From NCBI RefSeq assembly GCF_902713615.1, contig NC_052161.1, positions 21,532,388-21,596,387 of the forward strand: 64,000 nt of DNA. Reading direction: 5' to 3'. The notes under the pieces were generated by a model, which saw nothing but the letters and a program-made list of their open reading frames with translations, was not told where the DNA came from and did not search any database. Made by a program: the position numbers and the translations under genes. Source of the stretch: Scyliorhinus canicula. Its lineage: Eukaryota. Shown one piece after another: positions 3,815-64,000 of the stretch (positions are counted from its first letter, which is position 1; every line of letters begins with the position of its first letter).

Positions 3815-6745
3815 AAATCTGTAATCATAGAGCTGAGAAACAGCAAGGGGCAAAAAACATTAGTGGGGGTTGTATATAGACCCCAAGCTGTAGTGGTGAT
3901 ATTGGGAATGGCATTAAACAGGAAATTAGCGATCAATGCGATAAAGGAGCACCTTTAATATGGGTGATTTTAATCTGCACGTAGATTGGGCAAATCAAAT
4001 TAGTCACAATACCGTAGAGGAGGAATTCCTGGAGTGTACACGGGATGGTTTACTGGACCACTACATTGAGGAACAAACTAGAGAACAGGCCATCCTAAAC
4101 TGGGTATTGTGCAATGAGAAAAGAATCATTGACAATCTAGTTGTGCAAGGCTCCTTGGGGATGAGCGACCATAATATGATAAACTTTTTCATCAAGATGG
4201 AGAGTTACATAGTCAATTCTAAGAATAGGGCCCTGAATCTTAATAAAGGAAACTACAATGCTATGAGGCATGAGTTAGGTATAATAGGGTGGGAAACGTT
4301 ACTTAAACGGATGACGGTGGATAGGCAATAGCAAACATTCAAGGAGCACATGGGTGAACTGCAACAATTGTTTATTCCTGTTAGGTGCAAAAGTAAAACA
4401 GGAAAGGTGGCCAAACCATGGGTTTACAAGGGAAATTAGAGATAGTATTAGATCCAAGGAGGAGCACACAAATTGGCCAAGAAAAATAACAGACCTGAGG
4501 ATTGGGAGCAGTTTAGAGTTCAGCAAAAGAGGATCAAGGGATTGATTAAGAAGGGGAAAATAGAGTACAAGAGTAAGCTTGCAGGGAACATTATGTGAAG
4601 AGAAAAAGATTGGTGAAGACAAATGTAGGTCCCTTATAGTCAGAAACAGGGGAATAGGGGTCAAGGAATAGGGGTCAAAGAAATGGCTGAGCAGCTAAAT
4701 ATATACTTTGGTTGTATCTTCACAAAGGAGGACACAAACAAGATACCAGAAATGTTGGGGAACACAGGGTTTAGTGAGAGGGAGGAACTGAAGGAGATCA
4801 ATATTAGTAGAGAAATGGTGTTGGAGGAGTTGATGGGATTGAAAGCCGATAAGTCACCAGTGCCTGATAACCCACATCCCAGAGTACTTAAAGTGGCTCT
4901 AAAAATAGTGGATGCATCTTTGGTCATCTTCCAGGATTCTATAGACTCTGGAACAGTTCCGACAGATTAGAGAATAGCTAATCTAACCCCACTATTTAAA
5001 AAGTGGAAACAGAATTATCGACCAGTAAGCCTGATTTCAGTGGTAAGGAAAATTCTAGTATCCACTATCAAAGATTTTATAGCAGAGCACTTGGAAAACA
5101 GTGGCAGTATCAGACAGAGCCAGCATGGATTTATGAAGGGGAAATCATGCTTGACAAATCCATTGGAATTCTTTGAGGATGCAACTAATAGAGTAGATGA
5201 GGAGGAGCAAATGGATGTGGTTTATTTAGACTTTCATAAGGCTTTTGACAAAGTCTCACATCAGAAACTGTAAAATTAAAAAATGTTAAATTAAAGCACA
5301 TGGGATTAGAGGTAGTGTATTGAGATGGATGGAAAACTGGTTGGCAGACGGAAAACAAAGAGTAGGAATAATCATGTATTTTTCCAAATGGCAGGCAGTG
5401 ACTGGTGGAGTGCCGCAGGAATTGGTGCTGGGACCCCAACTATTCACTGTACATTAATAATTTAGATGAGGGAACAAAATGTAATATCTCCTGATTTGCA
5501 GATGACACAAAGCTGGGTGGGAGGGTGAGCTGTGAGGAGGATGCAGAGATCTTTCAGTGTGATTTGGACAAGATGAGTGAGTGGGCAAGTGAATGGCAGA
5601 TCAGTATAATTTGGATAAATGTGAGGTTATCCACTTTGTAGCAAAAGCAGGAAGGCAGATTATTATCTGAAAGGCCATAAATTAGGAGAGGGGAATGGGC
5701 AACAAAACTTGGGTGTCCTTGTACACCAGTGGCTGAAGGTAAGCATGCAGGTGCACCAGGCGGTAAAGAAGGCAAATGGTATGCTGGCCTTCATTGCGAG
5801 AGGATTCGAGTACAGGAACAGGGATGTCTTGCTGCAATTAGGGGCAGCACGGTAGCATTGTGGATAGCACAATCGCTTCACAGCTCCAGGGTCCCAGGTT
5901 CGATTCCGGCTTGTGTCACTGTCTGTGCGGAGTCTGCACATCCTCCTCGTGTGTGTGTGGGTTTCCTCCGGGTGCTCCGGTTTTCTCCCACAGTCCAAAG
6001 ATGTGCAGGTTAGGTGGATTGGCCATGATAAATTGCCCTTAGTGCCCAAAATTACCCTTAGTGTTGGGTGGGGTTACTGGGTTGTGGGTATAGGGTGGAG
6101 GTGTTAACCTTGGGTAGGGTGCTCTTTCCAGGAGCTGGTGCAGACTCGATGGGCCGAATGGCCTCCTTCTGCACTGCAAATTCTATGAAATTCTATGAAA
6201 CTATACAGGGCCTTGGTGAGTCCATACCTGCAACATTGTGTGTAATTTCGGTCTCCTTATCTGAGGAAGGATGTTTGTGCAGTAGAGGGAGTGCAGAGAA
6301 GGTTTACCAGACTGATTCCTGGGTGGCAGGACTGACGTATAAGGAGAGATTGAGTCAGTTAGGATTGTATTCACTAGAGTTCAGAAGAAGAGGTGGGATC
6401 TCATAGAAACCTACAAAATTCTAACAGGACTAGACAGGGTAGATGCAAGAAGGATGTTCCCGATGGTGGAGCTGTCGATAACTAGGGGGTCACAGTCTGA
6501 GTATATGGGGCAGGCCATTTAGGACAGAGATGAGGAGAAAGTCCTTCACCTAGATAGTAGTTGGCACCATAGAAAGCGGTTGAGGCCAAAACACTATAGA
6601 ATCAGTTAGATATAGCACTTGGGGCAAAAGGGATCAAAGGATATGGGGCAAGGCAGGATCAGGCTGCTGAGTTGGATGATCAGCCAATGATCATAATAAA
6701 TGGCGGAGTAGGCTCGAAGGGCCGAATGGCCTCTTTCTGCTGCTT
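3815..6745 (+). mobile_element. CR1-clade LINE, degraded ORF2 (endonuclease and RT), interrupted by a SINE
   Basis: ORF fragments GVVYRP, MGDFN, SDHN, QHGFMKGKSCLTN and VYLDFHKAFDKV, FADD at about 5496-5507, CR1 3' tail. Confidence 0.9.
5841..6200 (+). mobile_element. tRNA-derived V-SINE (HE1-like) nested in CR1
   Basis: A/B boxes (GGTTCGATTCC), V-domain GGGTTTCCTCCGGGTGCTCCGGTT, CR1-type tail with TTCTATGAAA repeats. Confidence 0.9.
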
Positions 6746-8303
6746 TTTTTCATTGTTTCCGTGAGACTTCAGTAGGTCCAACCAATCAACTATCCCCTTC
6801 CCAATATTCCATTGATCCTTAATGCACTTGCTGAACATAGATTGGAAAGTGAAACAATTGCTGCATAGCTGCATTATCACAGGAGAATGTCTGCTGACCT
6901 CCCGAGTGAAATTCATTTTCAAAACACATTTTCTTTTGTAAAGGGAAGATAGCAAATTATTTGTACCAATGAAATGCCACAGGTAGAGACATGGCAACCA
7001 CTGGGCCCATCAATAGGCAAGGATATGGACAACACCCAGGTTGACACAGCAGGTAGGTGGTGCGAAATAGAGAACTTGGAAGAGTTGTCAGATTCGGATT
7101 TGTAATTAAATGTGTGGTCTGCATTTTTATGTGATTATTGAAAGGTTGTTCATCAAATTTTGGAATTTCAGTCAATGTTGATTTGGGGTTTAATCTTGAG
7201 GTAACAAGATTAACCGGTCCATTTCTGGGTGGCCTCTCCCAGAGATCTCGCCTGCCAGCTACAGAGCCAGTGGCCTCATTTTGAGAGGGCTCAACACATC
7301 CTGTTCTACTCTGGCACTTGAGAGGCCAGCAGTGGGCCTTCGGGCTGGGACATAGCTTGGGGACATAAGTCCTGTCTGCCAAGAGCTGTCAACCAATCAG
7401 AGACCTCTACTCAACACCAATGAGTTAGCTGCAGCTGGTACAACAGCCACCCAATGCCTCAGATCAGCCAGGGGCCTAGGCACAGGAGTGTTGGGGGGGG
7501 GGGGGGGGGGGGGGGGAAGGGGTTCAGCAGCAAGGGCAGGAAGATGCTCTCCACAGGACATCTTTTCCACTGTCAGTTCCTTTGAAGAGGCGCAGAATGC
7601 CTTTAAATTAGGTCCATCTCCTCCTCCAGCCGCCCCCCACCTCTCGCCCACCGCCCGGAATCTTGCAGGAAAACCAGGCAGGATTTACTGGTTGTGCTCC
7701 ATCCATGGTGAACACCATTCTCCTCCTCACCTGCCACTAGGTTAATACCAGCACTGATGGGATGAGGCCCTTATTTGGGCATTAATTGCCATCTTGGTGG
7801 GGCCTTAACTGACAATGGGGCAGATATTCCATCCCTGGGCCTTCCCACCACGGACTTAATTGGGGTAGAGGCCGGTTGGTGGCAGGGCCCCCATGTAACT
7901 AAATGCCTCCTTTGTCATTCCAGCCGTGGGGAAGGGCACACGACTCTGCCCCCTGTCCCTTTAGTCCCATCATTACCAACTTCTCTGGCTATTTTGCCCC
8001 AACCTTTGGAAATCTCATTGTCTAACCTCTTCGCTTCTGAGTCTCAACTAGTTGTGGAAGACATTGCAACTGCGCTTCCCCTTAAATCCATCCTATCTAC
8101 TCCATTTCCCCCTTTTGGGATCGATTTTTATTTGCCCAACGTGGGCATTGATGAGAGACGAATTTCATGACACAATGTAAGCTGCTGGTGTGTAGTAGCA
8201 CTGTTGTACATTTGTCTTTATTCTGGAAATACCATCTGGACATGGGATTGATACATTTAAAACGTATTAAAAATAATTCCAAACCTTAAACTAAGTGCAG
8301 TAC

Positions 8304-25122: not shown

Positions 25123-25285
25123 ATGTCTGCACTATTGGGTGTCTCCAGCACTTTAAAAAAAAATCAGGTTTGTTTGGCTCTTTGTCCATTGAGATAATTT
25201 GGTTTGTTCATTCGGAGATACATTTGTTTATTCCAGAAGATTCCACAGGGAGTGCAAGTTTTATTGTAAGAACCCAATCACTCAC

Positions 25286-25640
25286 CTGTTTGTCAGGGGG
25301 CCTATGAAGGGGTTTGTCACGAGCTGCACGGTGGCCTTTGAAGCAAACAACAATCCAACTTGGACATTCTCATTCAGCAAGTCCTTGTCCCTATTAAAAC
25401 AGCTCCCGTTGGAATCGACTGCCACAGTCGTGTTGCTCACGGAGGGCTGGGTTGTTCTGAGCACCTGCCCTTCATCTCCTCCCTCGCCTTCTGGCTCCGT
25501 TATCATTGTCGTGTTGTCATAATAGGAAAAGATTTTCTGAAATCGAGTGGCGGAAACAACTACAGGGGTCGGGGTCGGGGTCGCGGTTTCCTCCAGTGAT
25601 TGATGGTGAAGAGTATACAGGTAACTGGGGATGATGGGCA
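25286..25640 (-). CDS. SLC18A2: VMAT2 coding exon 2 (luminal loop and TM2: PIIPSYLY...DKDLLNENVQVGLLFASKATVQLVTNPFIGPLTNR)
   Basis: Inside ORF 25282..25650. Acceptor tttgcag, donor AG|GTGAG, 355 nt, phase consistent. DKDLLNENVQVGLLFASKATVQL is VMAT2-type rather than VMAT1-type. Confidence 0.97.
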
Positions 25641-27499
25641 CTGCAAACACATACAGAAGTTACACTTTCAAACTCACTGGTCTGAAATCCAGCAGCTCAG
25701 TCTGGTCAACACACAAGACACATGGTAAAGATGTTATTCTGATACTTCAGTGATTATATTTATGCAGCTTGTGTCTTGCCAATCCACATCCAGTCATTAT
25801 TTCCTCAATCTCTACCACCGGTAAATGAGATTTATAGAGTTCAATCCCTGACACCTCAACAACAGCTTCAAACTCACATCTTTTATGGTGAATGCTGGCA
25901 TTATAAACCACCTTGGGCTATGAAATAAGGACCATGCATTTAGAATCATGCACAGGCCATTCTGATCTGTTGAAATGAAATGGTCTACCTCTGTATTTGA
26001 ATCATTATTGTCTTAGGGTGTCGATTAATCACTCGGTTAGTACGATTAGCTATTGTTTTCATCTCTTCCATTGGGAGCTCAATATTGGTGTGAATTTGAT
26101 TCCTCTGCCCACCAATTGAAGATGTGCAGGTTAGTGAGCGAGGGACAATATGCACATGTATACCTCACACTGATTGGCAATAGTCTGACATCTCCAGTTA
26201 TGGAGGAGTGTGTCAGACAGCACCTCTCATTTGTCGTCGTTTCTGCTGCCCAACTGGCAATATTTAATCATCGGCTGCACCCGATGCACTGAGTAAAATA
26301 ACACCAATCGGCGTCTTTCAATGAGCGGCTTCTAAAAAGTCTGAGGGCATCTTGCAAAGGATATAAGTTTTAGAAGCGTTTAATGATGACAGTAATTCTG
26401 TTTGTTTTTGAGGGATTGTCCTGTGTTTTGCTTGGTTTGTGTAGACTAACCAATGATCTAGGACAGGGTGGACCCTGCAGCATCACTAACCAGGTCTCCT
26501 CCAGTTACACTGACTCCATGTGTTATCCTCCCTTCGTGTTGGAACGCCAGAGCAGAATAACTTAATCCAATAACCCTCATTTCAAACACCTCGAAATAAT
26601 CCGTTTCCCTCCCACTGTCTGTCTTTGTTGTGTTCACCTTGCCGTTACAATACCGAGTTTATTTGCTAATCATTCCCCATTTAAAACTTGAGCAGGGTTA
26701 GCCCACTATTTCTAGTATTGCGAACCCATTGCATTGCAAACCTTTCAATAGATCGAGCAAAAGAATGCTGCGGAAGAGATGAAGATTAAACAAGAGGAAT
26801 GAAATGCCCCAGAAGGGACAGGCTTCCCAATGGGTTCCACCCATCAGTTCGATAAAGCAGCGGTGAAAACGCCGTTTATTGGGAGTTGCTTCATATCTAC
26901 CGTAACTTTATGAGGTTTAATGGAAGAGAATGGAACCCATAGAATTCTTTACTGTTATTCTATTAGTTTACTATTTAATTTTCTATTCTTCACTGTTTGT
27001 CGAATCAGGTTATTTCAGCAATGAAACTCCAGCAAAACGACACTTTCAGTCATTGGGAACAAGTCTTTCTAATCTGAATTGAATGATTGGCGTGTGGGGA
27101 AAGGAGAAGATGATTCAATTTGCTGAGAGCCTTTCACTATTGAGTGCGATCGAGGTTAATTTGTGACCCAACTCCAGAATTTCCACATTTACTTCATACC
27201 ACTTGGGAATGTATCAATTTCACGTTTCAACTTAACAACTGACCGAATCTCAGTTCTGCTAAAACTTCCAAACTTTACAACCCTAAGGTATGTCAAACTG
27301 CTTCGTAACTTGAACGTGGAAAGATTGGCAATGTTCCCCTGGTCCTAGGTTCGCAATCAGTTCCCCGTTGAAATCTTTGATGAGACCGCCCTTAGTCACC
27401 CAGATTTCCGGGACTCCAGCCCTAGTTATTGTATTGCCACCTTGTCATTTCATTACTGGTATCATTCGGCCAAATCTTCACTGTATTTCACCCAAGGCT

Positions 27500-28345: not shown

Positions 28346-29735
28346 ATTGTGTGTATCTGGCTCCCCTTTATAAAACCGTGCTTGGTCTCCACGATCAACT
28401 GGCCATTTTCTCGGTATCAGTCACTCTGTAAATATAAACCTCCCAGTGTCTATAACAGGCGGCCAATCACGACCCCGGCTGTCTCTAATCAGAAATAAGA
28501 TCAAGCCCCTACAGGTCCCAGAATCCGAAACAAAATGCAGGCTTTACAATGTCTATAATCTGCAAACACATTTACACAAATTAGGAGGATGTTCAGCTCT
28601 TGGGAGGGAATTCACCAGAATAGACAGTGTTGGGGGACTTTAGAAAGTTGGAGAGTTTGACAGAGACTGGGATTGTTCAGCTTGGTGGGTCAAAGAGAAA
28701 CCCAATAACAGCTTTCAAAGTTCAACGGGATTTTTTTTGTTGTAGGAAGTAGGGGGAAACTGTTTCCTCTCACTAGTAACCAAAGGTCAGAGATTTTAAA
28801 TAATTGGTAACAAAACATATAGCAAGAAAGTGAAGGTTTTTTTTCTCTCTCTCTCTCCTCGCCACCAGTCCCCGAGGATGGTTAAATTCTGGCACTCACC
28901 AGCAGGAAGGATGGCCGAATCAGACCCTATAGGAACCTTTAAAAAGGCAATTAGACGTGGCCTTGGAAGATAACTAATTTGGATGGGTTTGGGGTGGGGA
29001 TTAATTGAACAGCTCTTTCAAAGATTCGAGAAATGACAGTGTCTACAATCCGAAATCAGTGTTGAACCCAGGTAAAAGTTTGTGATGATGGTCATTATCA
29101 CAAAGAAATCGGGTCTCGACTGTCTCCGGGTCCTTTAAGGAGCACACAGTCCCTGTCAATGACATGGTCACCGTGTACAGATCGTTCTGAATGGTGGGGC
29201 GCCAATTGAACAGATAATCCAGTGGACCCTATCAATACAAAGTCTCGCTTCATTCCCATCCCTGGATGTACTGAAGCAGTTAGTAAACTGGCACAGACCC
29301 ATACGATTGTTTTGTTTGCCGAAGGGAGGGGTGGCTTTAAAAGTTAGAGTTGTGTTCGAAGCAGAGAGTGGTACTGACCCCAACTGGAGGCGGGCTGTGT
29401 TACTGCACAGACTGGCGCTGATCTCCAGACACAACCCAGACTGTTTGTTTCAGAACATCAACCCGAAACATTTTATACCCAGAACAATACCGGTCATTTA
29501 AATATTATGATAGGCTACAGACCGCCTGCCTATGCCATGGCTAAACAATTAAAAAGGGCTTTTTGAAACAACAACAACAAAATCCAGATATTTTCCACTG
29601 CTCCCATGAAAACAGTGGCTTCCCTTTTAGAAAACAGTGGAAAATGTGGAATGAACCTGGACTTGATTTGATGGCCAAATAGCTCAGGGTCCTCCCGCAC
29701 CCTCCCGCAGCCCCACCTGGACTTATTTCACTCAC

Positions 29736-29862
29736 CCACCACCGTCAGCAGCATGTTGTCCAGCAGTAGTGCGATAAACACTATAAACAGGATCAGCTTT
29801 CGAGACTGTCGACCGTCCCTTAGCCAGCGCAAAAAACTAAACTCTCTGAGCCTCTCCATCAT
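29736..29862 (-). CDS. SLC18A2: Vesicular monoamine transporter 2, coding exon 1 ([42 protein letters not shown])
   Basis: Manual translation matches the VMAT2 N-terminus/TM1 ([23 protein letters not shown]). ATG at 29862 (or 29859), donor G|GTGAGT at 29735, upstream acceptor ttccccctcccag at 29888. Confidence 0.95.
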
Positions 29863-30080
29863 CAACTGGTGCCGGCCACACCGACTCCTGGGAGGGGGAA
29901 GCATACATCAGATTAACAACATCATACTCGACAGTCAAGATGAAGAAAGGCAACGCAAAGCCAAACTGCCCTCCACAAATGTTGCTAAGTTTTGGCTGAT
30001 TGTGAATGTAATGTAACAATATACAGAATGCCAGCAGAGGGTTAGCCTTCAGAACCTGCTCTGCTCCAACCATCACTCAC

Positions 30081-30200
30081 CTCGATTCAGCAAAATGCAC
30101 GGGCTGGAGAATCGCTTCTATCCCCGATAGCTCCAACTGGGAAAGAGAGCCATGCAGATAGTGGGCAGGTCGAGGGGATTGCTCCTGTCCAGTGACGCTG
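30081..30200 (-). other. SLC18A2: Probable non-coding first exon of SLC18A2 (5' boundary approximate)
   Basis: Strong donor GAG|GTGAGT at 30081/30080 pairs with the acceptor at 29888 (193-nt intron). Mammalian SLC18A2 also has a non-coding exon 1. Confidence 0.6.
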
Positions 30201-30445
30201 TGATTCCTCACATTTCAGCGCCTTCCTGCCGATATTGACGTGCGAGGGAATCGCTTGATAAGGCGCCGTTGACAAACAGCGGGCCAATCCGCTTCAGCTC
30301 GCACTTCATTCCAATATTTTCCACTTAGGAAATCAAAGTTCACCTTCAATTTTAATAAAGCTGTTACCTCCTCTCCCCCCTCCCCCTCTCCAAATAGAGC
30401 CAAACTGTTGATGCTGCTGAAAAACAAATGGATAAGGCGCTTTGA
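30190..30445 (-). promoter_or_regulatory. Putative SLC18A2 proximal promoter
   Basis: CpG-containing unique sequence with CRE-like TGACGTGC (30236-30243), CRE half-site TGACG (30193), CCAAT (30284-30288) and duplicated GATAAGGCGC (30257, 30431). Confidence 0.5.
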
Positions 30446-31983
30446 GCGATTTATATATTCCATTGAGACTGTTTGCACACTAACATCCTGTAATTGCTGA
30501 CACGAAGCGACCCGTAGTAATTATTAACAAGCAAACTTAACGATTGTTGAACAAAATTGCATTTTTGCCACTTTATGGCATTGTCTCCCCTCCTCCCCGC
30601 CCCACCTCTATTCCCACTTCGCAGATACCATCGCGTTTGGTTTCAGACCCGAAAGCAAATTTTCTATCGAATTCTTTCGCACGCTGATCATTGCTAAAAC
30701 GGCAGGAAAGTAGAGCGCGGCGCACCGACTCCCCACAACCCACCTGCAAGGACTGGGTTAGATCTCGTCGCGAGTAATGACATGGAATTCTTTATGGGCA
30801 AACACATATATTGATTTGACCAAATAGAACTCAATCGCCACCTTGTATTAGGACATTTTAAAGACTAAACGTTCATCAACAAAACGTTTTGTCCAACGTT
30901 TAGCTGAGTAAATGGATAACACATTTCCTGTGTCTAAATATTTCATCATGGTGAATAATTTTATATTAACTTTTATAATAATTGCTGGTTCCTTAGTGAG
31001 CTTTCAGCCTAATAGTTTGTTCATCAATTACATTGCTATATAATGGCATAGATGGATGGGCCGGACTTTACACTTAAGGACATTTGCTACATTTGTACTT
31101 ATTGATTTTCTATGGGCGTTTGCACCGTAAATTGTTGCTCGCTAACTATTGAAAAAGTGGTGCCTTATACAGAGGAGCTGGGATCCTTGTGACAGGCCAC
31201 ACAATTGTGTATTTCCTTAACCAACCAGATTGAAGACTAGTTATTGGGCAGGACAGAATCTGAAACAGAAGTGTCAGGTGGGATATTTAATTCAATGTAC
31301 AGTACAGAAAGTTAAAGAGAGGGGAAGAAAGAATGATTGCATTGAGATGCACAGACATTAAAGAGATACAACTTGAAAGTAATTTGAAAAAATCTCTAAC
31401 AATTATTAGAACAGAAGGAAATGTGACTCCACATTTATAAACTTCGATTTCAGTGCCATTGGTCATGAGTAATTTAGACTTACCACACTGCTGAAAGGGC
31501 ACTTATGCTCTTTCTGGTGGGAGTAGTTTATATCTATGATGCCAGTGTATTTCATGCCATTCAATGTATTTGAATGGGGAGTTTGTTGGTGAGGTACCAT
31601 CAAATGTTGGTTTCAGCTAGGACATCCCGATCCTGATGGGGCGCCCAATCCAAGCTCTTTAATTTAATGTAATGTTGTTTAATTCTGGATCTCAACCCAG
31701 TTATGAACATTTTTGGAAGTCGGGCTGGACTTTTAGTCCTTGAACTTTTCAATTCTTCAACAGTAATTTTATCAGGCCCTGCCCAGTGTCCTTTTCAAAT
31801 TGATCAATCATTATGTCAATTCTTCTTCATCAATTGGATTAAATAGTTAGAAATGCCCTTTTCGTGCATTTAGCAAATTTGCCTACATTGACCTTATTAT
31901 TAATTATTGATAATCTCTGTGTAAAATAGTCTAATTCTCCTATTTTTAAGTGGCATTTAATTTGACTGGATTGCTTATTAATC

Positions 31984-32372
31984 GTCTATGCACCAATCCT
32001 CTGAAAGAGCACCTACCGAGGTGGATTGGACGTAACAGTGGCACATTGGTTAGCACTGCTGACTCACAGCACCAGGGACCCAGGTTTGAATCCGGCCTCG
32101 GGTGACTGTCTGTGTGGAATCTGCACGTTCTCCCCATGTCTGTGTGGGTTACGCCTGGGTGCTCCGGTTTACCCCCACTGTCCAAAGATGCGTAGGTTTG
32201 GTGGATTGGTCATGCTAAATTGTCCCTTGGTGTCCAAAAACGTGCAAATTAGGTGGGGTTACAGGCTCACGGGGATAGGTTGGGGGAGTGGGCCGAGGTA
32301 AGATGCTCTTTCAGATGGTTGGTACATACTCAATGAGCTGAATAGCCTCCTTCTACACTGTAGGAATTCTAT
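31984..32372 (+). mobile_element. V-SINE inserted in the R2 relic, preceded by an inverted piece of its own 3' part
   Basis: Body 32028-32372. 31984-32020 is the reverse complement of the GTGCTCTTTCAGAxGGTTGGT region. Confidence 0.8.
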
Positions 32373-33235
32373 TGAGTCTAGCCAAGCCTTTCTGATTTGT
32401 TTACCAAAAATTTGAAATTCTTTACATTTCTGCTTCTTTGTGACTAATCTTTTCCTAGCTTCGGTATTTTTAAAGGGTAGATTCCAATTAGTATGGTGCG
32501 TTATATTTGATGGCTTATTGTTTACTTTATCTACTTTTAAACCTGAAAAAACAACCACATCAAATATATGTTCTATCAAACATCTCATTTGTTCTTTCTT
32601 AATACCCTTTTTATCACTATCAATTAACTTGTCGGTTATATTCATTAATGTTACAGTGTCAACTTTGTCATAGTCATGATTCTTGTCTCCGTATCACTCA
32701 TTTCTGAGTTACCCCTATTTAAATTCAATTCACTTTCTGTTCTTCGAGGAACCATTATATCCACTCCATCTCCAGCTGAAGAAGTGGTAACCTCAGATAG
32801 ATTAACGTTGACTATTGAATCCTCAGAAGAATTACAATTATTCCTAAACTTAGTCGTTTGAGCTGTGCGCTGTTTACCAGAAATCTGTTTGTTAATTTTA
32901 GTAACTAATATTTTGACTATAGTTGCATTAATATTCTTACATCCAGCCTATTTTTTTTTCTTGTTGAAGGAGCTGCAAAACCTCTTCCTCAGACCAAATT
33001 GAATATTTTCTTGTGACTGTCTGATCAAGACCAGCCATTCCTTTCAGATTTTGTGATCCAGGGCACATGCGGACTTCATGTTGACTGAGGCCTCATTGAG
33101 TCTTAAAACTCTTCTCAAACCTGGAACAATTAAAGACCATGACTGTCTCCTTAGCAGCCTTTTCACTCTTGCTACACCAAAGCAAAATCTTGAAAATTTT
33201 TTGTCTGTTCTTCTAATGTCTCCTAATATTAGTAA

Positions 33236-34707
33236 CATAATCCTGGGAGGAGACACCAGAGGTGATCATTATCTCCCTTCACGCAGAGAAGGCCTTTAAC
33301 AGAGTCGAATGGAAGTACCTCATGGAGGTATAAGGACGTTTTCGGTTTGAGCCAAGTTTGACCTCATGAGTGAAATTACTGTACTGTGCTCCCATGGCGA
33401 GCATACGGATGAACGCCACCAGTTCTGGGTACTCTCGGCTGCATCGCAGCACAAAGCATGGATGCCCCTTGGACCCGATGCTATTTGCCCTGGTACTCGA
33501 ACTCCTGGCCATTGCCTTAAATGATCAGCGAGTAGGTGGAGGCATCCAGAGAGGAGACAGAGAGCACAGAGTCTCACTCTATGCAGTTGGCCTGTTCCTC
33601 TACGTCTCAAACCACATAGCCAGCATGGGAGGAACAATGGATCTCTTAAGGAAGTTGAGAGCCTTCTTGGGCTAATCAATCTGAGCAAGTGCAAAATATT
33701 CCCCGTAAACGCCTGGGGCAGAAGGTGTGGGGGGGGGGGGGGGGGGGGGGGGGGGGACCAGAGCTGTGGGGAATCCCAATCAAGCTGGACAGGACAAACC
33801 TCCCTTCCTCATGCACAGGGCTGAGCCTAACGCAGTTAAAGGTACTGCACAGGGTGCACTTGACCAGAACATTCCTGACGAGTTCTTCCCAGAGGTGGAG
33901 GACAAATGTCAACAGTGCCATGGAGGCCCGGCCAACCACACCCGCATGTTCTGCTCATGCCCCTGACTTCTCAAGTACTGGGCTGCCTTTTTTGAGGTAA
34001 TGTCCAAGGTTGTGGAGGTGAGGGTGGAGTCATGCCCAAAAGTGCCGGTCTTCAGGGTATCAGAACAGCCAGAACTCTTTACAGAGAGCGGGGCAGACAC
34101 CCTTGACATTTCCTCCCTGATTGCGTGCCGGAGATTCATACTAGGCTGGAGATCAGAAGCGCCACCTAGGGGCTCCGGCTGACTGTCCGACTGAGCAGAA
34201 TTCTTCAAATTCACCATCAGAAGATCCGGGGAGTGCTTCCACAATACATGGCAGCAATTTACCAAGATGTTTGAGGACCTGTTCGTAACCAGCAACCAAT
34301 AAGGGAAAGGAGGAGAATACATAATCCAGAACACAGGGAAAACAGGGCAGAGGGACCAAAAGGGCACTGAAGGGGGAGGAGGAAAGCCCAGGAAAGATGC
34401 CCAAAACACCACCGAGAAGGACACATCTGGGTGACCGCAAGCAAGCCCCTGCTGTGTCTTAACACCAGGGAGCCACACAGAAATAGAGGAACAGGGCGGT
34501 CGGGTACCTGATCAACGGGGGCCTAAAGCAAACAGGCCCCAAACCTGTACATATATTCTCCAGTTAATTTGTAGCAGATTACATTAATTCCCAGTTGATG
34601 TTATATTTTATACTGTACATTTCCACTGTTTCCTGTATGTTTAATCACTGATGTAACAACGCTGTTACAATTCGAAAGTAAAAAAACAATCAAAACATTC
34701 CAAAAGA
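33236..34707 (+). mobile_element. 5'-truncated, internally deleted L1-clade LINE inserted in the R2 zinc finger
   Basis: AEKAFNRVEW, HGCPLDPMLFAL, VSLYA, C-terminal CQQC..HxxxxC, A-rich tail, TSD AGTAA (33231-33235 and 34708-34712). Confidence 0.85.
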
Positions 34708-34817
34708 AGTAAGTTAATTTGAAATGTAATTGTAAATTGGACATTTAAATTGATTGCAGGGATAGTAAATCTTAATGGTATTGTTAAAATCACCAGTATG
34801 TATTAAGGCTTGTGTTG

Positions 34818-35084
34818 CAGATGAAGAGACATTTATTCATCCACAGAGTGGTTGGCCTATGGAATTCACTGCCACAGAAAATAGTTAAAAGCCAAAACAT
34901 TGCATGCTTTCAAGAACGAGTTAGATATAGCTCTCGGGGCAAAAGGCATCAAAGGATATGGGGGGGAAGTTGGGATCTGGCTATTGAGTTAGATGATCAG
35001 CCATGGCCGTAATGAATAGTGGAGCATGAGCTAAGGGCCGAATGTCCTCCTCCTGCTCTTATTTTCTATGTTTGCTATTTTCTA
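34818..35084 (+). mobile_element. CR1 3' fragment inserted in the R2 relic
   Basis: RVVGLWNSLP motif, TTTCTATG tail, candidate TSD TGTTG (34813-34817 and 35085-35089). Confidence 0.8.
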
Positions 35085-35742
35085 TGTTGATCATGAATGT
35101 TCTTAACATTAACTTTGATGGTTTCGTGATTAACAAGTTTGTCGACAGGAATGCTACCCACGTTGTTGAAATTAAAATGGTAAGGTGATTAAGAATTTAT
35201 ATTATGAAAGATCAAATTAACGTTAGTTGATAAAATCTGGATAAAAGCCAAGTCTTATGGGGAATCCTCAGATGTATCTCACTTTAGCTACCATGAGCAC
35301 CTCTGCGTTCACATCCACCCGAGGTAAACAAATAGTTATTATCTTCCATGGAGAAAATCCCATTTGTCAACAAAGCAGAATTAGTAAATAGTCTTATAAA
35401 ATCCTCCTTGTCAGTTTGTGTATTGGAGGCTATAACTGATGTTGCAATGGCAGGTACAACAAACACACCTTGACCTAAATAGCAGGAATATTGAACATAA
35501 TTAGTCACCGGATTATTCATCCATCAGTTATCATCCCAGCCGGAACAATCAGGACTATCCATATCTAAGTTGTATCAAAGCCTCATAATCATCCACCTGG
35601 AAAGAAATGTTTTTTATAAAGCAGCCCATCGGGGTGATTTTACCTATCCAACCGTATTTGCCATGGCACCATCCAAATAGCCAAACAGACATGGGAAGCC
35701 AAGAACAGTCCTAGATTAACCACAACCAGTTGACTATTTGTA

Positions 35743-35821
35743 GTTCGACACATCATTTTCCAGTGGCACCAAGTAGAGGTACGATCCACCATGGGTTAGA
35801 ACTCATAACATCCATAGCACC
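35743..35821 (-). ncRNA. Degenerate HDV-like ribozyme of the R2 5' end
   Basis: Minus strand GATCG-T-ACC-TCTACTT-GGT-GCCACTGG...TCGAAC: P3 ACC/GGT, 7-nt L3 and imperfect P2, at the expected position upstream of the R2 ORF. Confidence 0.55.
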
Positions 35822-35835
35822 TCATCTGTGGATGT

Positions 35836-37340
35836 TCACTCCTCTATGCCTCTCAGTATTCTCCTGTTTATTGTATGATCTTCTGCCTTGTTTGACCTCC
35901 CCAAGTGTATCACCTCACACTTGTCTGTCCACCTGACCAGCCGCAGTCTATTCTCCTCACTATCACCCATGCAGACGAATTTTGGGTTGTCTTTGAACTT
36001 CTTCATCGTTCCCTCCAACATTTATGTCCACATTATTAATATATAACCACGAAAAGCAAAGGATCTAGGACTGTCACCTAAAAACACCTGTCAACAATTT
36101 GTTTTCTGCCACTGAGCCGATTTTGTATTCACCTTACTACGTTCCCCTGGATCCCATGAGTGTTTATTTTTTTAACCAGTCTGCTATGTAGAACCTTGCC
36201 AAAAGCCTTGCTAGAATCTATGTCGATCACATCAACTGCACTACCCTCATGAATCCTCTTGATTACATCATCAAAACATTCAATAAAGTCAGTTTGACAT
36301 GACCTTCCCTGAAAAAATCCATGCTGAATATCCTTGATTAATCCATGCAATTCTAAGTGACAGTTTATTCTGTCTCTCAGAATTGATTACAATAAGTTCT
36401 CTCAAGTTCCCCTCCAAGACACCCATCATCCTGATTTGGAACTATATTGCCATTCCTTCACTGTTGTTGGGTCAAAATCCCGGAAATCCCTCCCTAATAG
36501 CACTGTGAGTGTACCTACACCATATGGACTGGTATTTTCAGAAGGCAGTTCACCACCGCCGTCTCAAGGGTAGTTAGGGATGGGCAACCAATGCTGGCCT
36601 AACCAGCACCGCACACGTCCCGTGAAAGACTTTTAAAAAATTCCCACTGATGAGTTTAGACTGGTTGGCTTGTAATTATTCAATCTATCCTTTGCTGCCT
36701 TTTTAAACAAAGGTACATCATTAGCAGACCTCCAATGCCCCAGGACCAAAGATTTATCCCATGAGGATTGGAATGTGATGGCCAGATCTTATGTTATTTC
36801 CTTCCTGGCTTCTTTTAACAGCCTGGGGTGCATTTCATCTGACCTTGGAGATTTACCCACTTACAAGGTTGCTAATCCCCTCAATACTTTCTCTCTCCCT
36901 ATGGTCACCACATCCAATATTGCACACTTGCCCTCCATTTTTAGGATCACCTTTATTTTGCTTGCCAATATTCTTTCAGGTCCTCTCTTTGCTTTCCTAA
37001 TTTCCTTTTTCATTAAATTCCTCCACTTTCTGTACTCTTAGCTTGCTGCAATATTGCTTGAACATATAAGACCCTGAGGGGCCTTGACAGGGTGGACATA
37101 ATCTTTCCTTTTTCTGTCTTCTCTTACCCTGTAAGCTCCTTGACATCCAAGGTGCTCTACATTTGTCCATCTCACCCTTTTTCTTTGTGGGAATAAGTTT
37201 ATTCTGAAACCCTTGAACATTCCCTTTGAATGCCTCCCATCATTCTGATATTGCTTTATCTTCAAGCAGTTCTTTCCAGTCCAGTTTTGTTAAATCACTT
37301 CTCGGCTTCGTAAAATTGGCCGTACCCCAATTTAGAACTA
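35836..37340 (-). mobile_element. Degraded CR1 RT fragments with a nested repeat at about 36405-36640
   Basis: ORF 36129..36350 contains QHGFFQGRSCQTDFIECF..SKAFGKV, and ORF 35836..36021 contains KCEVIHLGRSN. Confidence 0.8.
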
Positions 37341-38958
37341 AAGACCCCCAAACAATCAGTGGGAGATATAAGAGAAAATATGTCGGCTGAAGAACAGTCA
37401 TTGTCGGGGTTTTTAACTATCTCAATATGAACTAGGATAGTGTCAGTGTGAAAGGAACAGAAGAAACAGAATTCTTAAAGTGCATTCAGGGGAACAATTT
37501 TTGACCAGCGTGTAGCAAGTCCAACAAGGGAAGGTACATTTCTGGACTTAGTTTTAGGTAACAGAGTTGGGCAGCTGGAAGGTGTGGCAGTGGGGAGCAC
37601 TTTGGTGCTAGCGATCAAGATGCAGTTAATTTGAACATAATTATGGGAAAGGACAATAGTTCTTTCTATTGTTGAGGTTTGGGAGTGTTTTACGAAGTTA
37701 TGTTGAGGGGGCACAAGGGCAGAAGAAAAGTTCCATGGCTGAATGTAGCAGCAGATATTTCAATAAAAAATAGAGTTGTGGAGAGCAATGGGGCCTTTGA
37801 ACCTTTAGCCATGGGTTAATGGTACGCAGCGATAATGCTGCTGGGCTAGTAACAAAGTGGCCCAGGCTAATACTTTGGCAACATGGATTCAAATCCCACC
37901 CACCATGTCAACTGGTGGTATTTGAATTCAGTTAACAAATCTGGAATATAAAACTATCACTTATCTGGTTCACTGATGTCGCTCAGTGAAGGATATCTGC
38001 CAGCCTTACCCTACATGGCCTACATCTGACTCCAGAGGTTGACTCTTAACTGCCCGCTGGAATGACCCAGCAGGGCCAGTTCAAGGTCAATAGGGATGGG
38101 CAACAAACACTGGCCTTTCCATATTTCATGAAAGAGTTAAAAAAAAACTTCCTGTTTGCGACATTGCCCCCGTCACATGATGTCCCAGCTTAAGCCCCAG
38201 CTGGGTCCCTAAGCCCCTCCCTTTGCATCCTGCTGGCTAGCCAGTAATTGACAATGCTTGATTGGTCGAACTGAGATGGCAGAGGTGGCCTACTCTGTAT
38301 CCATTCCCCCGCCCTCCCGGAAGAAGATAAAACCAGCTCAATATCTTTGGTTCACTTTGTAACTGTATAGTATTGAACTGCTGAGATAGTCAAATGCCCA
38401 AATTCCACGTTAGCAATTGATGCTTGCGTGCATGCTGCCGTCTCCTGTCCCGACATTTTCACACGGATCGACGTACTTCAGAATGATTATGTCCCTTCAT
38501 CCCAGACCTGATAGGTCCTCCTAGTTGAACTGCAACATTTCAGATGGGGATGGAAGGGTGGGAAATGAGGGGTCCGAAAAAAACATGCTGGAAATGCTCA
38601 GTGGGTTTGTCAGCATTGCTGGAGAGAGAAATAGTTAATGTTTCAGGTCACTGACCTTACATTAGAACATTTTGAGGTGTAAGAGATTCTCAGCAAGTGC
38701 AGAGGCTGGGGAAGGCATGAGAAACCAAAGCGAACGGTCTGTGATAGGCTGGAAGGGAGGAGAGATTAAATAATGAAGAGAATGATGGTGCAAGGCAAAA
38801 GCGAATGGTAATGGGACAAGAAAAAACAGGTATAGAGGAGGTGTAAATGGCAATAGCAGAATCATTATAAAATGCTGCTCTCCAAAAAACAATGGGAGTA
38901 ATGCTTACAATTGGAACTTGTTGAACTCAGTGGAAAGCCTGGAAAGATGAGAAACAGC

Positions 38959-62469: not shown

Positions 62470-64000
62470 CACTTTGAAAATCCTTTACCTGAGCAGGAGA
62501 GAGAGGAGTCAAGGGAGGTCTTCTCGTCAGCATCCAAAGGGATAGTTAGAATCTAACAATAGACTGAAGACTGGCGAGGAGGAAAGTTGCAGGGGCAAAT
62601 TGACAATGGGGAGGGTCAACTGCGTAGGGCAAGAATGGTGCAATACGAGTATGGGGAGAAGGCGGGCTGCATGCTGGCGCACCAGCTGCAGAGGCAGGCT
62701 GTGTCCAGGGAAATATTGAAGATCCGGACTGGGGCTGAGGATGTGGTGTCAGAGCCAGGGAAGATAAATGAGGCATTTCGGGAGTACTACCAGGGATTTT
62801 ACGAGGCGGACCCGGGGGGAGAGGAGGGGGACATGGGGCAGTTTTTGGATGAGCTGGAATTTGCCCATGTGGAGGAAGCAAAGAGGCAGGTGTTGGAGGA
62901 GCCCCTGGGGCTGAGGGAGGTGCTGGGTAGTATTAGGGATATGAAGCAGGGGAAGGCCCCTGGGCCGGATGGGTACCCGGCGGAATTTTACAAGCAATTC
63001 GCGAAGGACCTGGCACCACATCTGTTGGGAACGTTTAATGAAGCACTGGAGGAAGGGGGAATTGCCAGAGACGATGACAAAGACAGTAACCGTACTAATC
63101 CCGCAAAAGTGGAAGGAGCCAGCGGAATGTGGGTCATATAGACCCAAAACACTATTGAACATGAATGTGAAAGTATTGGCTAAGTTGTTGGCGGGGAGGA
63201 TGGAGGATTGTGTCCCGGGGGTGGTTGCAGAAGATCAAACAGGCTTCGTGAAGGGCAGGCAGCTCGCGAGTAATATAAGATGACTGTTGAATGTGGTGAT
63301 GAATCCGCCGGGGGCTCTGGTACCGGAGGTGGTGGTGTCCATGGACACGGAGAAAGCATTTGATCGGGTGGAGTGGCGGTACTTGTTTGAGGTTTTGGGA
63401 AGGTTTGGGTTTGGGCCTAGATTTGTGACATGGATGTGGTTGCTGTATGTGGCAGAAAGGGTGAGGGTTTGGACAAATGATATGAGCTCACAAAGCTTTG
63501 ACTTACACAGGGGTACACAGGGGTACCCGCTGTCGCTGCTGCTGTTTGCGCTGGCCATAGAGCCATTGGCGATGGCTCTCAGGGGATCGGCGGAGTGGCG
63601 GGGGATTATGAGAGGACAGAAGAAGCATCGGGTGTCGCTCTATGCCGATGACCTCTTGCTGTATGTTTTGGATCCTTTGGACTGTATGGGAAGGATTATG
63701 GGCCTGTTGGGGAGGTTTGGAGGGTTCTCTGAATGTAGGGAAAAAAAGGGTATTCCCGGTGAACTGGGACAGTGGGCTAATTTAGGAGGGATGCCATTTA
63801 CAGTAGCGAGGGATAGGTTTAGGTATTTGGGGATTCAGGTAGCGAGGGAATGTATAGGGCTCTATAAGTGGAACTTAATGAAGCTGGTGGAGGAGGCCAG
63901 GGAGGATCTTAAGAGGTGGGATACACTGCACTTAATGTTGGCGGGGAGGGTCCAAGCGGTGAAAATGAATATTCTGCCGAGGTTCTTGTGTATCTTTCAG
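62470..64000 (+). mobile_element. L1-clade LINE ORF2 fragment (RT), runs off the right edge
   Basis: YGEKAG, GKAPGPDGYPAEFYK, SYRP..LLN, DQTGFVKGRQ, EKAFDRVEW and VSLYADD, with frameshifts. Confidence 0.92.

What the first reader, a model, noticed from the sequence alone, without database searches (positions are those of the whole stretch)
31626..35821. Hidden fossil R2-A retrotransposon outside rDNA, just upstream of SLC18A2
Seen: this AT-rich stretch looks unique in the ORF track. After removing three younger insertions (SINE 31984-32372, L1 33236-34707 with TSD AGTAA, CR1 34818-35084), the minus strand reads collinearly as three decayed zinc fingers, a Myb domain (32867-32996), the basic pre-RT segment, PIDEEEL..GPDKITVEELK (about 31747-31840) and W/RPIRIG (about 31626-31650). 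The first finger is split exactly by the L1: FKCPIYNY..|..TNIRRH*KNRQ. Established: three ZF plus Myb ahead of the RT is the R2-A architecture, and R2 normally inserts only in 28S rDNA. No 28S target sequence (CTCTCTTAAGG/TAGCCAAA) is visible at either end. Inference: either an off-target copy or a member of a dispersed, non-rDNA R2 lineage in this fish. It keeps the 5' end and lacks the 3' half, the opposite of normal TPRT truncation.
Basis: partly seen in the sequence, partly recalled or inferred. Interest (0 to 1): 0.85.

Follow-up and report, generated by a model that had tools for sequence, protein, structure and literature searches.

The report
Dead R2 retrotransposon fragment outside rDNA
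A long-dead, broken copy of R2, a jumping gene that normally lives only inside ribosomal RNA genes, sits about 1.3 kb upstream of the VMAT2 (SLC18A2) gene with no ribosomal DNA around it. It is a real but inert fossil, of modest interest as a rare vertebrate record of R2 outside its usual target.

Summary
When the three younger repeats are removed, the minus strand of about 35565-31626 reads collinearly as the N-terminal 40% of an R2 protein. In order it shows an N-terminal extension, ZnF3, a ZnF2 remnant with about 18 residues deleted, ZnF1, Myb, a basic linker, RT(-1) and RT0.

My frameshift-aware profile alignment against 48 R2 proteins gives:
- 130 versus 42.6±3.8 in shuffles for ZnF1-Myb;
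- 96 versus 40.4±4.7 for the linker and RT0;
- 52 versus 29.1±3.6 for ZnF3.

The alignments run straight across the SINE and L1 excision seams. PDB hits are only lineage-A R2 proteins. The closest relative is a three-finger R2 that sits in 28S rDNA.

Not confirmed: "RPIRIG" (RT1) is not significant (p about 0.1). The RT core, zinc knuckle and endonuclease are absent. No 28S sequence or R2 target is detectable.

The relic is single-copy at 80% identity or more, silent in four RNA runs, and present at about 5% divergence in a related species with the L1 and CR1 insertions already in place.

Best reading: one ancient ectopic R2 integration that later lost its 3' part. A dispersed non-rDNA lineage is not excluded. 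Extra-rDNA R2 copies and non-specific R2 families are already known, so this is a new member of a known kind.

The scan's first readers also noted other extra-rDNA R2 relics in this genome. I could not check those notes.

The parts
35392..35565 (-). Remnant of the R2 ORF's N-terminal extension, upstream of the zinc fingers
   Evidence: It aligns to residues 12-68 of the closest R2 protein, P0151: score 48 against shuffles 34.6±4.4, p about 0.01. It is single-copy by contig depth.
35090..35820 (-). 5' region of the relic (5' UTR plus the start of the ORF). The exact 5' end is uncertain, somewhere in about 35650-35820.
   Evidence: AT-rich and single-copy. No HDV-type ribozyme or 28S match in Rfam. 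The abutting CR1-type LINE can be followed to about 35825.
34818..35089 (+). Younger insertion: the 3' tail of a CR1-type LINE, flanked by TGTTG
   Evidence: Flanking repeat. 79% match to 6598-6758, which lies directly behind a CR1 C-terminal ORF. Depth about 1e4. Its left junction is bridged by contigs of the related species (table 8).
34717..34785 (-). First half of ZnF3 (…FKCPIYNY…); the second Cys has become Tyr
   Evidence: The profile alignment of 34785-33180 to R2 profile positions 57-99 crosses the L1 seam: score 52 against 29.1±3.6, p about 2e-4. It also has weak C2H2 similarity to CTCF fingers, E about 0.5.
33236..34712 (+). Younger insertion: a 5'-truncated L1-type LINE that splits ZnF3, flanked by AGTAA
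   Evidence: Flanking repeat. RT homology on the + strand at 33226-33654. High depth. Both junctions are bridged in the related species (table 8).
33135..33235 (-). Second half of ZnF3 (…TNIRRH*KNRQ) and a ZnF2 remnant lacking about 18 residues
   Evidence: The tblastn HSP with P0028 shows an 18-residue gap inside ZnF2. The HMM alignment shows the same gap.
33060..33134 (-). ZnF1 (FNCSRFEKSFKTQ*GLSQHEVRMCP), with one in-frame stop and the second Cys changed to Phe
   Evidence: PDB R2 hits; tblastn; profile DP 130 against 42.6±3.8.
32867..33000 (-). Myb domain (WSEEEV… then KNINATIV…KQISGKQR), with one frameshift near 32945
32373..32866 (-). Linker and basic pre-RT segment
   Evidence: It is part of the alignment of 32537-31705 to profile positions 285-433: score 96 against 40.4±4.7, p about 1e-7. 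It is also part of the single alignment to P0151.
31990..32372 (+). Younger insertion: a tRNA-derived SINE flanked by TCTAT
   Evidence: Flanking repeat. Ten other copies in the window at 70-79% identity. Depth 1e5-1e6. R2 alignments cross the seam.
31705..31989 (-). RT(-1) and RT0 (…PIDEEELT…GPDKITVEELK…LPKMF)
   Evidence: A separate tblastn HSP to P0151 residues 551-583 has E=1e-3.
31600..31704 (-). Possible RT1 remnant (W/RPIRIG…), not statistically supported. This is the last trace of the element.
   Evidence: Score 31 against 25±4.6, p about 0.1. No R2-like signal from here down to 24000 apart from an unrelated CR1 RT.
35825..36395 (-). Flank: a 3'-truncated RT fragment of a CR1-type LINE abutting the relic's 5' side
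   Evidence: Pfam RVT_1. RT homology at 36105-36395. A continuation to about 35825. No CR1 remainder is found on the other side of the relic.
29600..30200 (-). Context: the first exons of SLC18A2 (VMAT2), in the same orientation as the relic
   Evidence: RNA reads and the splice joint 29886/30080. The next coding exon, 25285-25650, matches VMAT2 with E=4e-29.

Best explanation
This is an inert fossil of a lineage-A (three zinc fingers plus Myb) R2 non-LTR retrotransposon lying outside ribosomal DNA.

The most likely history is as follows.
1. A single R2 copy, from the kind of element that normally cuts and enters one site in 28S rDNA, was integrated once at an ectopic place. This could have been an off-target cut or capture of R2 cDNA at a chromosome break.
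2. It was never mobile from here, because R2 depends on co-transcription with rRNA.
3. It decayed neutrally, lost everything downstream of RT0/RT1 by deletion, and was later invaded by a CR1 tail, an L1-type LINE and a SINE.
4. All of this except possibly the SINE happened before the split from a related species that is about 5% diverged.

Today it does nothing detectable. Its identity is shown; the integration route and the deletion are inferred.
For: Identity:
- Collinear homology to R2 proteins from the N-terminal extension to RT0.
- One alignment to P0151 over 33176-31458: 28.7% identity over 411 residues, 11 stops, 7 frameshifts, score 181 against 43±4.7.
- P0151's own contig starts with 229 nt of 28S, so the nearest relative is a canonical R2.
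- In the tree the relic is sister to P0151, SH-aLRT 90.

One-off copy:
- Relic-specific bins have single-copy depth in both species when reads or contigs count from 80% identity.
- There is no second copy in the window.

Age:
- Contigs of the related species bridge both L1 junctions, the left CR1-tail junction and the 5' flank, at about 5% divergence (table 8).

Inert:
- No RNA reads on relic-specific sequence in four runs that do show SLC18A2 splicing.

Precedent:
- Incomplete R2 copies outside rDNA occur in five Drosophila species (PMC2718515).
Against: - The 3' junction, which is the only place where target-primed insertion leaves a readable signature, is missing. The mode of entry therefore cannot be read.
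- A copy that keeps its 5' end and lacks its 3' end is not what target-primed reverse transcription produces, so a second event (a deletion) has to be assumed.
- First-stage notes list at least four other extra-rDNA R2-like relics in this genome. They are unchecked, and they would fit a dispersed lineage better.
- An old family whose copies differ by more than 20% would escape the depth test.
- Contigs of the related species stop matching at 31606 and at 31660. The locus there may therefore differ between the species.
Confidence: 0.55

Rival explanations
1. The relic belongs to an old R2 lineage that had lost 28S specificity and spread through the genome, possibly into 28S-like sites inside CR1 LINEs. 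It would be one of many scattered copies.
For: - Other first-stage notes report R2-type relics outside rDNA elsewhere in this genome, and one reports a CR1 empty site that mimics the R2 target. All are unchecked.
- Here the relic's 5' side abuts a CR1 fragment that ends within a few codons of CR1's '…VHRSLKV' motif. Another CR1 copy in the window reads CTGAAGGTAAGCA at that motif, which is close to the R2 target core AAGGTAGCC.
- The relic falls outside the well-supported teleost R2 clade.
- Non-specific R2 families exist in flatworms and sponges (PMC5035012, PMC13188248).
Against: - No other copy at 80% identity or more in either species, and none in this 64-kb window.
- Its nearest relative is a canonical 28S-inserted R2.
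- At the junction the CR1 sequence seems to run on past the mimic rather than stop at the cut site. The best CR1 copy in the window reads GAAAGTTGGCATCC there, not the target.
- The pattern count is at chance level: 23 found against 21 expected.
Confidence: 0.22
2. A piece of an R2-bearing rDNA unit was moved here as DNA, by ectopic recombination or as filler in break repair. Retrotransposition was not involved. That would explain a fragment with a 5' end and no 3' end.
For: - The fragment's shape (5' part present, 3' part absent, no target duplication visible) fits a random DNA segment better than a target-primed copy.
- The flanking CR1 is itself truncated at the junction.
Against: - No 28S remnant on either side at Rfam E up to 10.
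- No alignment above shuffles between the 28S-plus-junction segment of L012 and 36400-35090: score 25 against 23.3±2.5.
- At most about 150 nt of unassigned sequence lies between the CR1 fragment and the inferred start of the element.
Confidence: 0.15
3. It is not R2. It is a chance run of motifs, a host ZF/Myb pseudogene, or another non-LTR clade such as NeSL, R4, Utopia or CRE.
For: - Single pieces, Pfam, and the linker or RT0 read-throughs against the PDB give nothing.
- The RT(-1)/RT0 region is also shared with L1-type elements.
Against: - Probabilities of 1e-7 to 1e-17 against shuffles, and the tile is a unique outlier among real sequence.
- A Myb domain directly after ZnF1 is the R2 hallmark, and Utopia lacks it (PMC13188248).
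- All significant hits are R2 proteins, and the order and spacing of the domains match.
Confidence: 0.03

Closest known systems
Lineage-A R2 elements of vertebrates and other animals (R2Tg/TaGu 9dou and 9nl3, Platysternon R2 P0015/9nl2, Astyanax P0028, metagenomic P0151)
   Same: - Same domain order: N-terminal extension, ZnF3 (C-P-x-C type), ZnF2, ZnF1, Myb with the KNIN…KQIS-K-R motif, basic linker, RT(-1), RT0.
- Same spacing: about 260 residues from Myb to GPD.
   Different: - The relic is not in 28S.
- It has 11 stops and 7 frameshifts.
- ZnF2 is partly deleted.
- The RT core, thumb, zinc knuckle and restriction-like endonuclease are all missing.
- Identity to the nearest relative is only 28.7%.
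Extra-rDNA R2 copies in Drosophila (Stage and Eickbush 2009, PMC2718515)
   Same: R2 copies not inserted in a 28S gene, frequently incomplete, and not a source of active elements.
   Different: Those copies are young, 1-2% diverged from the rDNA copies. This one is ancient, heavily decayed, carries nested insertions, is shared between species, and lies in a vertebrate next to a protein-coding gene.
[quoted passage not shown]
   Same: R2-type proteins found at sites other than 28S.
   Different: Those are multi-copy families with many recent insertions. Here only one copy is detectable, and its nearest relative is target-specific.
Endonuclease-independent LINE-1 insertions at DNA breaks (from my own knowledge of the L1 literature, not checked here)
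   Same: Copies that can be 3'-truncated, lack target-site duplications, and come with loss of flanking DNA. That is what this locus looks like.
   Different: This has been described for L1, not for R2. It is only an analogy for how a 5'-retaining fragment could arise.

Membership tests
R2 superfamily | Myb domain directly downstream of a C2H2 finger at the protein's N-terminus | tested here: met
   ZnF1-Myb read-through hits only R2 proteins in the PDB. Profile DP gives 130 against 42.6±3.8. HMM domain on positions 56-199.
R2 lineage A | Three N-terminal zinc fingers (ZnF3, ZnF2, ZnF1) | tested here: met
   One HSP with the three-finger protein P0028 covers all three fingers. ZnF3 is significant on its own, p about 2e-4. 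ZnF2 is present only as a remnant with an 18-residue gap. The lineage-D protein R2Bm is not among the PDB hits.
R2 superfamily | Reverse transcriptase domain collinear with the N-terminal domains | tested here: inconclusive
   RT(-1) and RT0 are present and significant. RT1 is marginal, p about 0.1. Motifs 2-7 are absent.
R2 superfamily | C-terminal CCHC zinc knuckle and restriction-like endonuclease | tested here: not met
   No match to profile positions above about 475 anywhere near the relic or elsewhere in the window. I read this as loss by deletion, so it does not argue against descent from R2.
Canonical R2 | Insertion at the conserved 28S rDNA site (…TTAAGG/TAGCCAAA…) | tested here: not met
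   No LSU rRNA match at the gathering score or at E up to 10. No target string with up to 3 mismatches. Positive control: the same tool finds the 28S flank of L012.
Canonical R2 | HDV-like self-cleaving ribozyme at the 5' end | tested here: inconclusive
   No Rfam ribozyme match in 30800-37500. None was found in the intact reference L012 either, so the test has no power here.
Non-specific (dispersed) R2 family | Many copies at unrelated genomic sites | tested here: not met
   Single-copy depth at 80% identity or more in two species. No other copy in the window. Older, more diverged copies could not be searched for.

The most novel reading that the evidence does not exclude
The relic is one survivor of an ancient vertebrate R2 lineage that integrated outside rDNA repeatedly. 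One possible route is cutting 28S-like sequences inside CR1 LINEs, whose conserved '…SLKV…' codons can read CTGAAGGTA…. It would be the first dispersed, non-rDNA R2 lineage in a vertebrate. The scattered relics would then preserve R2 history that concerted evolution erases from the rDNA itself.
Probability: 0.15. Interest if true: 0.65.

Novelty: new member of a known kind. Interest (0 to 1): 0.35.

Why it matters
R2 copies inside rDNA are constantly homogenised and lost, so old R2 sequences are almost never preserved. A copy stranded in unique DNA is a dated fossil: it is older than three nested repeats and older than a species split.

This one shows that a lineage-A, three-finger R2 was present in this animal's ancestors. 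It is also one more datum on how often R2 escapes its target, which bears on the specificity of R2-based gene-insertion tools.

On its own it is a single inert pseudogene with no sign of function. I saw no evidence that it affects SLC18A2.

Tried and rejected
- Piecewise searches of uninterrupted ORF pieces against the PDB and Pfam gave no R2 or domain hits.
- The search for homologous proteins with a piece and with the read-through found nothing. Its length filter excludes full-length R2 proteins.
- ESM Atlas on a 51-residue piece gave irrelevant integrase-like neighbours.
- PDB and Pfam searches with read-throughs of ZnF3-ZnF2, the linker and RT0-RT1 gave no R2 hit. ZnF3 showed only weak similarity to CTCF fingers.
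- Translated DP against one decayed bird- or reptile-type copy (L003) supported only ZnF1-Myb. Its best downstream alignment was GPDKIT to GPDGIT, but p=0.25. Significance came only with the 48-protein profile and with P0151.
- Rfam found no 28S, no HDV-type ribozyme and no R2 RNA element.
- I looked for the missing 3' half downstream to 24 kb and window-wide and found nothing.
- I looked for the rest of the truncated CR1 on the far side of the relic, which would have proved insertion into that CR1, and found nothing.
- Nucleotide comparison of the CR1 copies was uninformative because the families are too diverged.
- ARAGORN did not recognise the tRNA-like head of the SINE.
- Pfam did not recognise the L1 piece at E up to 0.01.
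Full report
**1. What is in the sequence**

The finding concerns the minus strand. These are FKCPIYNY (about 34740), TNIRRH*KNRQ (about 33220), FNCSRFEKSFKTQ*GLSQHEVRMCP (33134-33060), WSEEEV…KNINATIV…KQISGKQR (33000-32867), PIDEEELT (31840-31814), GPDKITVEELK (31779-31747) and RPIRIG (31650-31626).

The three proposed younger insertions are real.
- Each is flanked by a 5-bp direct repeat: TCTAT for the SINE (31990-32372), AGTAA for the L1-type LINE (33236-34712) and TGTTG for 34818-35089.
- Contigs of four public DNA runs, counted from 80% identity, pile up on them at 1e2-1e6. The stretches between them sit at single-copy depth of about 4-13.
- The SINE has ten other copies in the window. The 34818-35089 repeat matches 6598-6758, directly behind a CR1 C-terminal ORF, so "CR1" is correct.
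- The L1 piece carries RT homology on the + strand.

After excision, a single frame runs for about 130 codons from before ZnF3 into Myb, with three stops.

**2. Is it more than chance, and is it R2?**

Uninterrupted pieces gave nothing in the PDB or Pfam. A read-through of ZnF1-Myb with X at the stop and at the frameshift hit only R2 proteins among 177,635 PDB sequences. These were 9nl3_A (1.3e-4), R2Tg 9dou_A (1.4e-4) and 9nl2_A (0.01). One spurious hit to a repeat-inflated engineered cytochrome trimer scored only about 8 bits per repeat.

I built a two-sequence profile from the R2 fragments that call printed. With it I fetched decayed R2 copies from public contigs. With an unaltered ORF of one of them I then fetched 150 R2-type proteins. 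Those with source names include Platysternon R2 and fish proteins from Astyanax, Beryx, Synaphobranchus, Dallia, Triplophysa and Syngnathus, the last annotated as R2.

Against the insertion-free relic:
- tblastn with Astyanax P0028 gives one HSP from ZnF3 through ZnF2 and ZnF1 into Myb, E=3.8e-9. It has an 18-residue gap inside ZnF2.
- An HMM of 48 full-length proteins gives one domain on HMM 56-199, i-E 4.3e-9, followed in the next frame by the second half of Myb.

I then wrote a local aligner of a profile against DNA that allows frameshifts. I calibrated it on dinucleotide shuffles.
- ZnF2 end, ZnF1 and Myb: 130 against 42.6±3.8, Gumbel p about 1e-13.
- Collinear quadrant downstream (32537-31705 to profile positions 285-433: basic linker, RT(-1), RT0): 96 against 40.4±4.7, p about 1e-7.
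- Collinear quadrant upstream (34785-33180 to profile positions 57-99: ZnF3): 52 against 29.1±3.6, p about 2e-4.

The second alignment runs across the SINE seam and the third across the L1 seam. This independently confirms both excisions.

As a control on real sequence, the R2-specific part of the profile scores 130 on this tile. The next unrelated tile scores 59 and the median is 38 over 126 tiles on both strands.

**3. Closest relative and lineage**

The best single relative is P0151, 779 aa, with three fingers. One alignment covers 33176-31458 at 28.7% identity over 411 residues, with 11 stops and 7 frameshifts. It scores 181 against 43±4.7.

The N-terminal extension of P0151 also aligns, collinearly, to 35565-35392 (p about 0.01). 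P0151's contig, L012, begins with 229 nt of eukaryotic LSU rRNA (Rfam, 105 bits). It is therefore a canonical 28S-inserted R2.

In a quick maximum-likelihood tree on 295 profile columns, the relic is sister to P0151 (SH-aLRT 90). It lies among three-finger proteins and outside the starred clade that holds the named teleost proteins. The relic's branch is long and its composition is skewed, so I take only "lineage-A type, not a teleost-clade member" from this tree.

**4. What is not there**

- RT1 ("RPIRIG") scores 31 against 25±4.6 even in a narrow collinear search (p about 0.1). By eye it resembles WRPITIG, but it is unproven.
- Nothing matches profile positions beyond about 475 downstream to 24 kb or anywhere in the window. 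The only other RT hits are the RTs of unrelated CR1 and L1 elements.
- The RT core, thumb, zinc knuckle and endonuclease are therefore gone.
- No LSU rRNA, HDV-type ribozyme or R2 RNA element is found at the gathering score in the window, or at E up to 10 in 30800-37500.
- The 28S target string is absent with up to 3 mismatches.
- The 28S-plus-junction segment of L012 does not align to the relic's 5' flank above shuffles.

**5. Surroundings**

SLC18A2 is confirmed. Exon 25285-25650 (minus strand) matches VMAT2 structures with E=4e-29, and VMAT1 far more weakly. RNA reads give a splice joint at 29886/30080 and cover 29600-30200. The relic, in the same orientation, therefore ends about 1.3-1.4 kb upstream of the first RNA-supported exon.

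No RNA read lies on relic-specific sequence in four runs.

On the 5' side, a CR1-type LINE RT fragment (minus strand, 36395 to about 35825) abuts the relic and is itself 3'-truncated. Its remainder is not found on the other side.

**6. Age and copy number**

A related species (organism B) holds the stretch at about 5% divergence: 45 differences and 7 gaps in 903 nt. Its contigs bridge both L1 junctions, the left junction of the CR1 tail, and the boundary with the flanking CR1. They reach 24-30 letters into the SINE and into the right end of the CR1 tail, just short of the tool's 31-letter criterion (table 8).

The relic, the L1 and the CR1 tail therefore predate that split, and the SINE probably does too. 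Eleven stops and seven frameshifts in 411 codons suggest much greater age. That is my inference; no rate was applied.

Relic-specific bins are single-copy in both species at 80% identity or more.

**7. How it got there**

- Shown: it is R2-derived, ectopic, old, single-copy at this threshold, and inert.
- Inferred: one ectopic integration followed by a 3' deletion. I prefer this (about 0.55) because the nearest relative is target-specific, no sister copies are seen, and incomplete extra-rDNA R2 copies are documented in Drosophila (PMC2718515).
- A dispersed non-specific lineage (about 0.22) is kept alive by unchecked first-stage notes of other extra-rDNA R2 relics in this genome, and of a CR1 site that mimics the target. 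It is also supported by the CR1 fragment here ending within a few codons of CR1's "VHRSLKV" motif. One CR1 copy reads CTGAAGGTAAGCA there. However, the CR1 sequence appears to continue past the mimic, and the pattern is at chance frequency in the window.
- A relocated rDNA fragment (about 0.15) would explain the 5'-only shape but lacks any 28S trace.

**8. Known or new**

R2 in cartilaginous fishes, including lineage A, is published (PMC13188248; R2Sqj in PMC5035012). Non-specific R2 families are known in flatworms, sponges and cockroach (PMC5035012, PMC13188248, PMC7650587). Extra-rDNA copies are known in flies (PMC2718515).

I did not verify the species.

This is a well-supported new example of a known kind. 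The interest is modest unless the genome-wide search shows a family.

Noticed in passing
window 31606-31660 (table 8, records 9, 10, 26): Contigs of the related species stop matching the window at 31606 and at 31660. They carry at least 1230 and 271 further letters that do not lie on the stretch. That species may hold extra low-copy DNA exactly where R2 homology ends here: either a deletion in this species or an insertion in the other. A second sample of this species (X5) bridges the place without a break.
   Followed up: no
L012:1-229 and 283-2622 (JGI metagenome 3300026616): A metagenomic contig carries a 28S fragment followed by an intact three-finger R2 ORF (P0151). This is the relic's closest relative. 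The host organism is unknown.
   Followed up: partly
L003:1-300 and 1200-2876 (Logan contig of SRR23174739; similar contigs L004-L008): A decayed R2 copy whose upstream 300 nt encode the C-terminal endonuclease region of another R2. No 28S was detected between them (Rfam at E up to 0.01). This looks like tandem or nested R2 pseudogenes outside a normal rDNA unit.
   Followed up: no
window 29886/30080, minus strand: RNA reads define a 193-nt intron (GT..AG on the minus strand) between an upstream exon of SLC18A2 and the exon holding the start codon. The region 29250-30250 is GC-rich, like a CpG-island promoter.
   Followed up: partly
window 62686-63664, + strand: A comparatively well-preserved L1/Tx1-type reverse transcriptase: score 80 against the RT part of the R2 profile, with KAFD and YADD motifs.
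   Followed up: no
window 4794-6758, + strand: A CR1-type LINE from the RT to the C-terminus and 3' tail, with a SINE copy inserted at 5878-6186. At its '…LKV…' codons it reads CTGAAGGTAAGCA, which is close to the R2 28S target core.
   Followed up: partly
window 59683, minus strand: A GC-rich, low-complexity stretch gives the highest unrelated score (59) against the N-terminal R2 profile. It is probably a compositional artefact.
   Followed up: no
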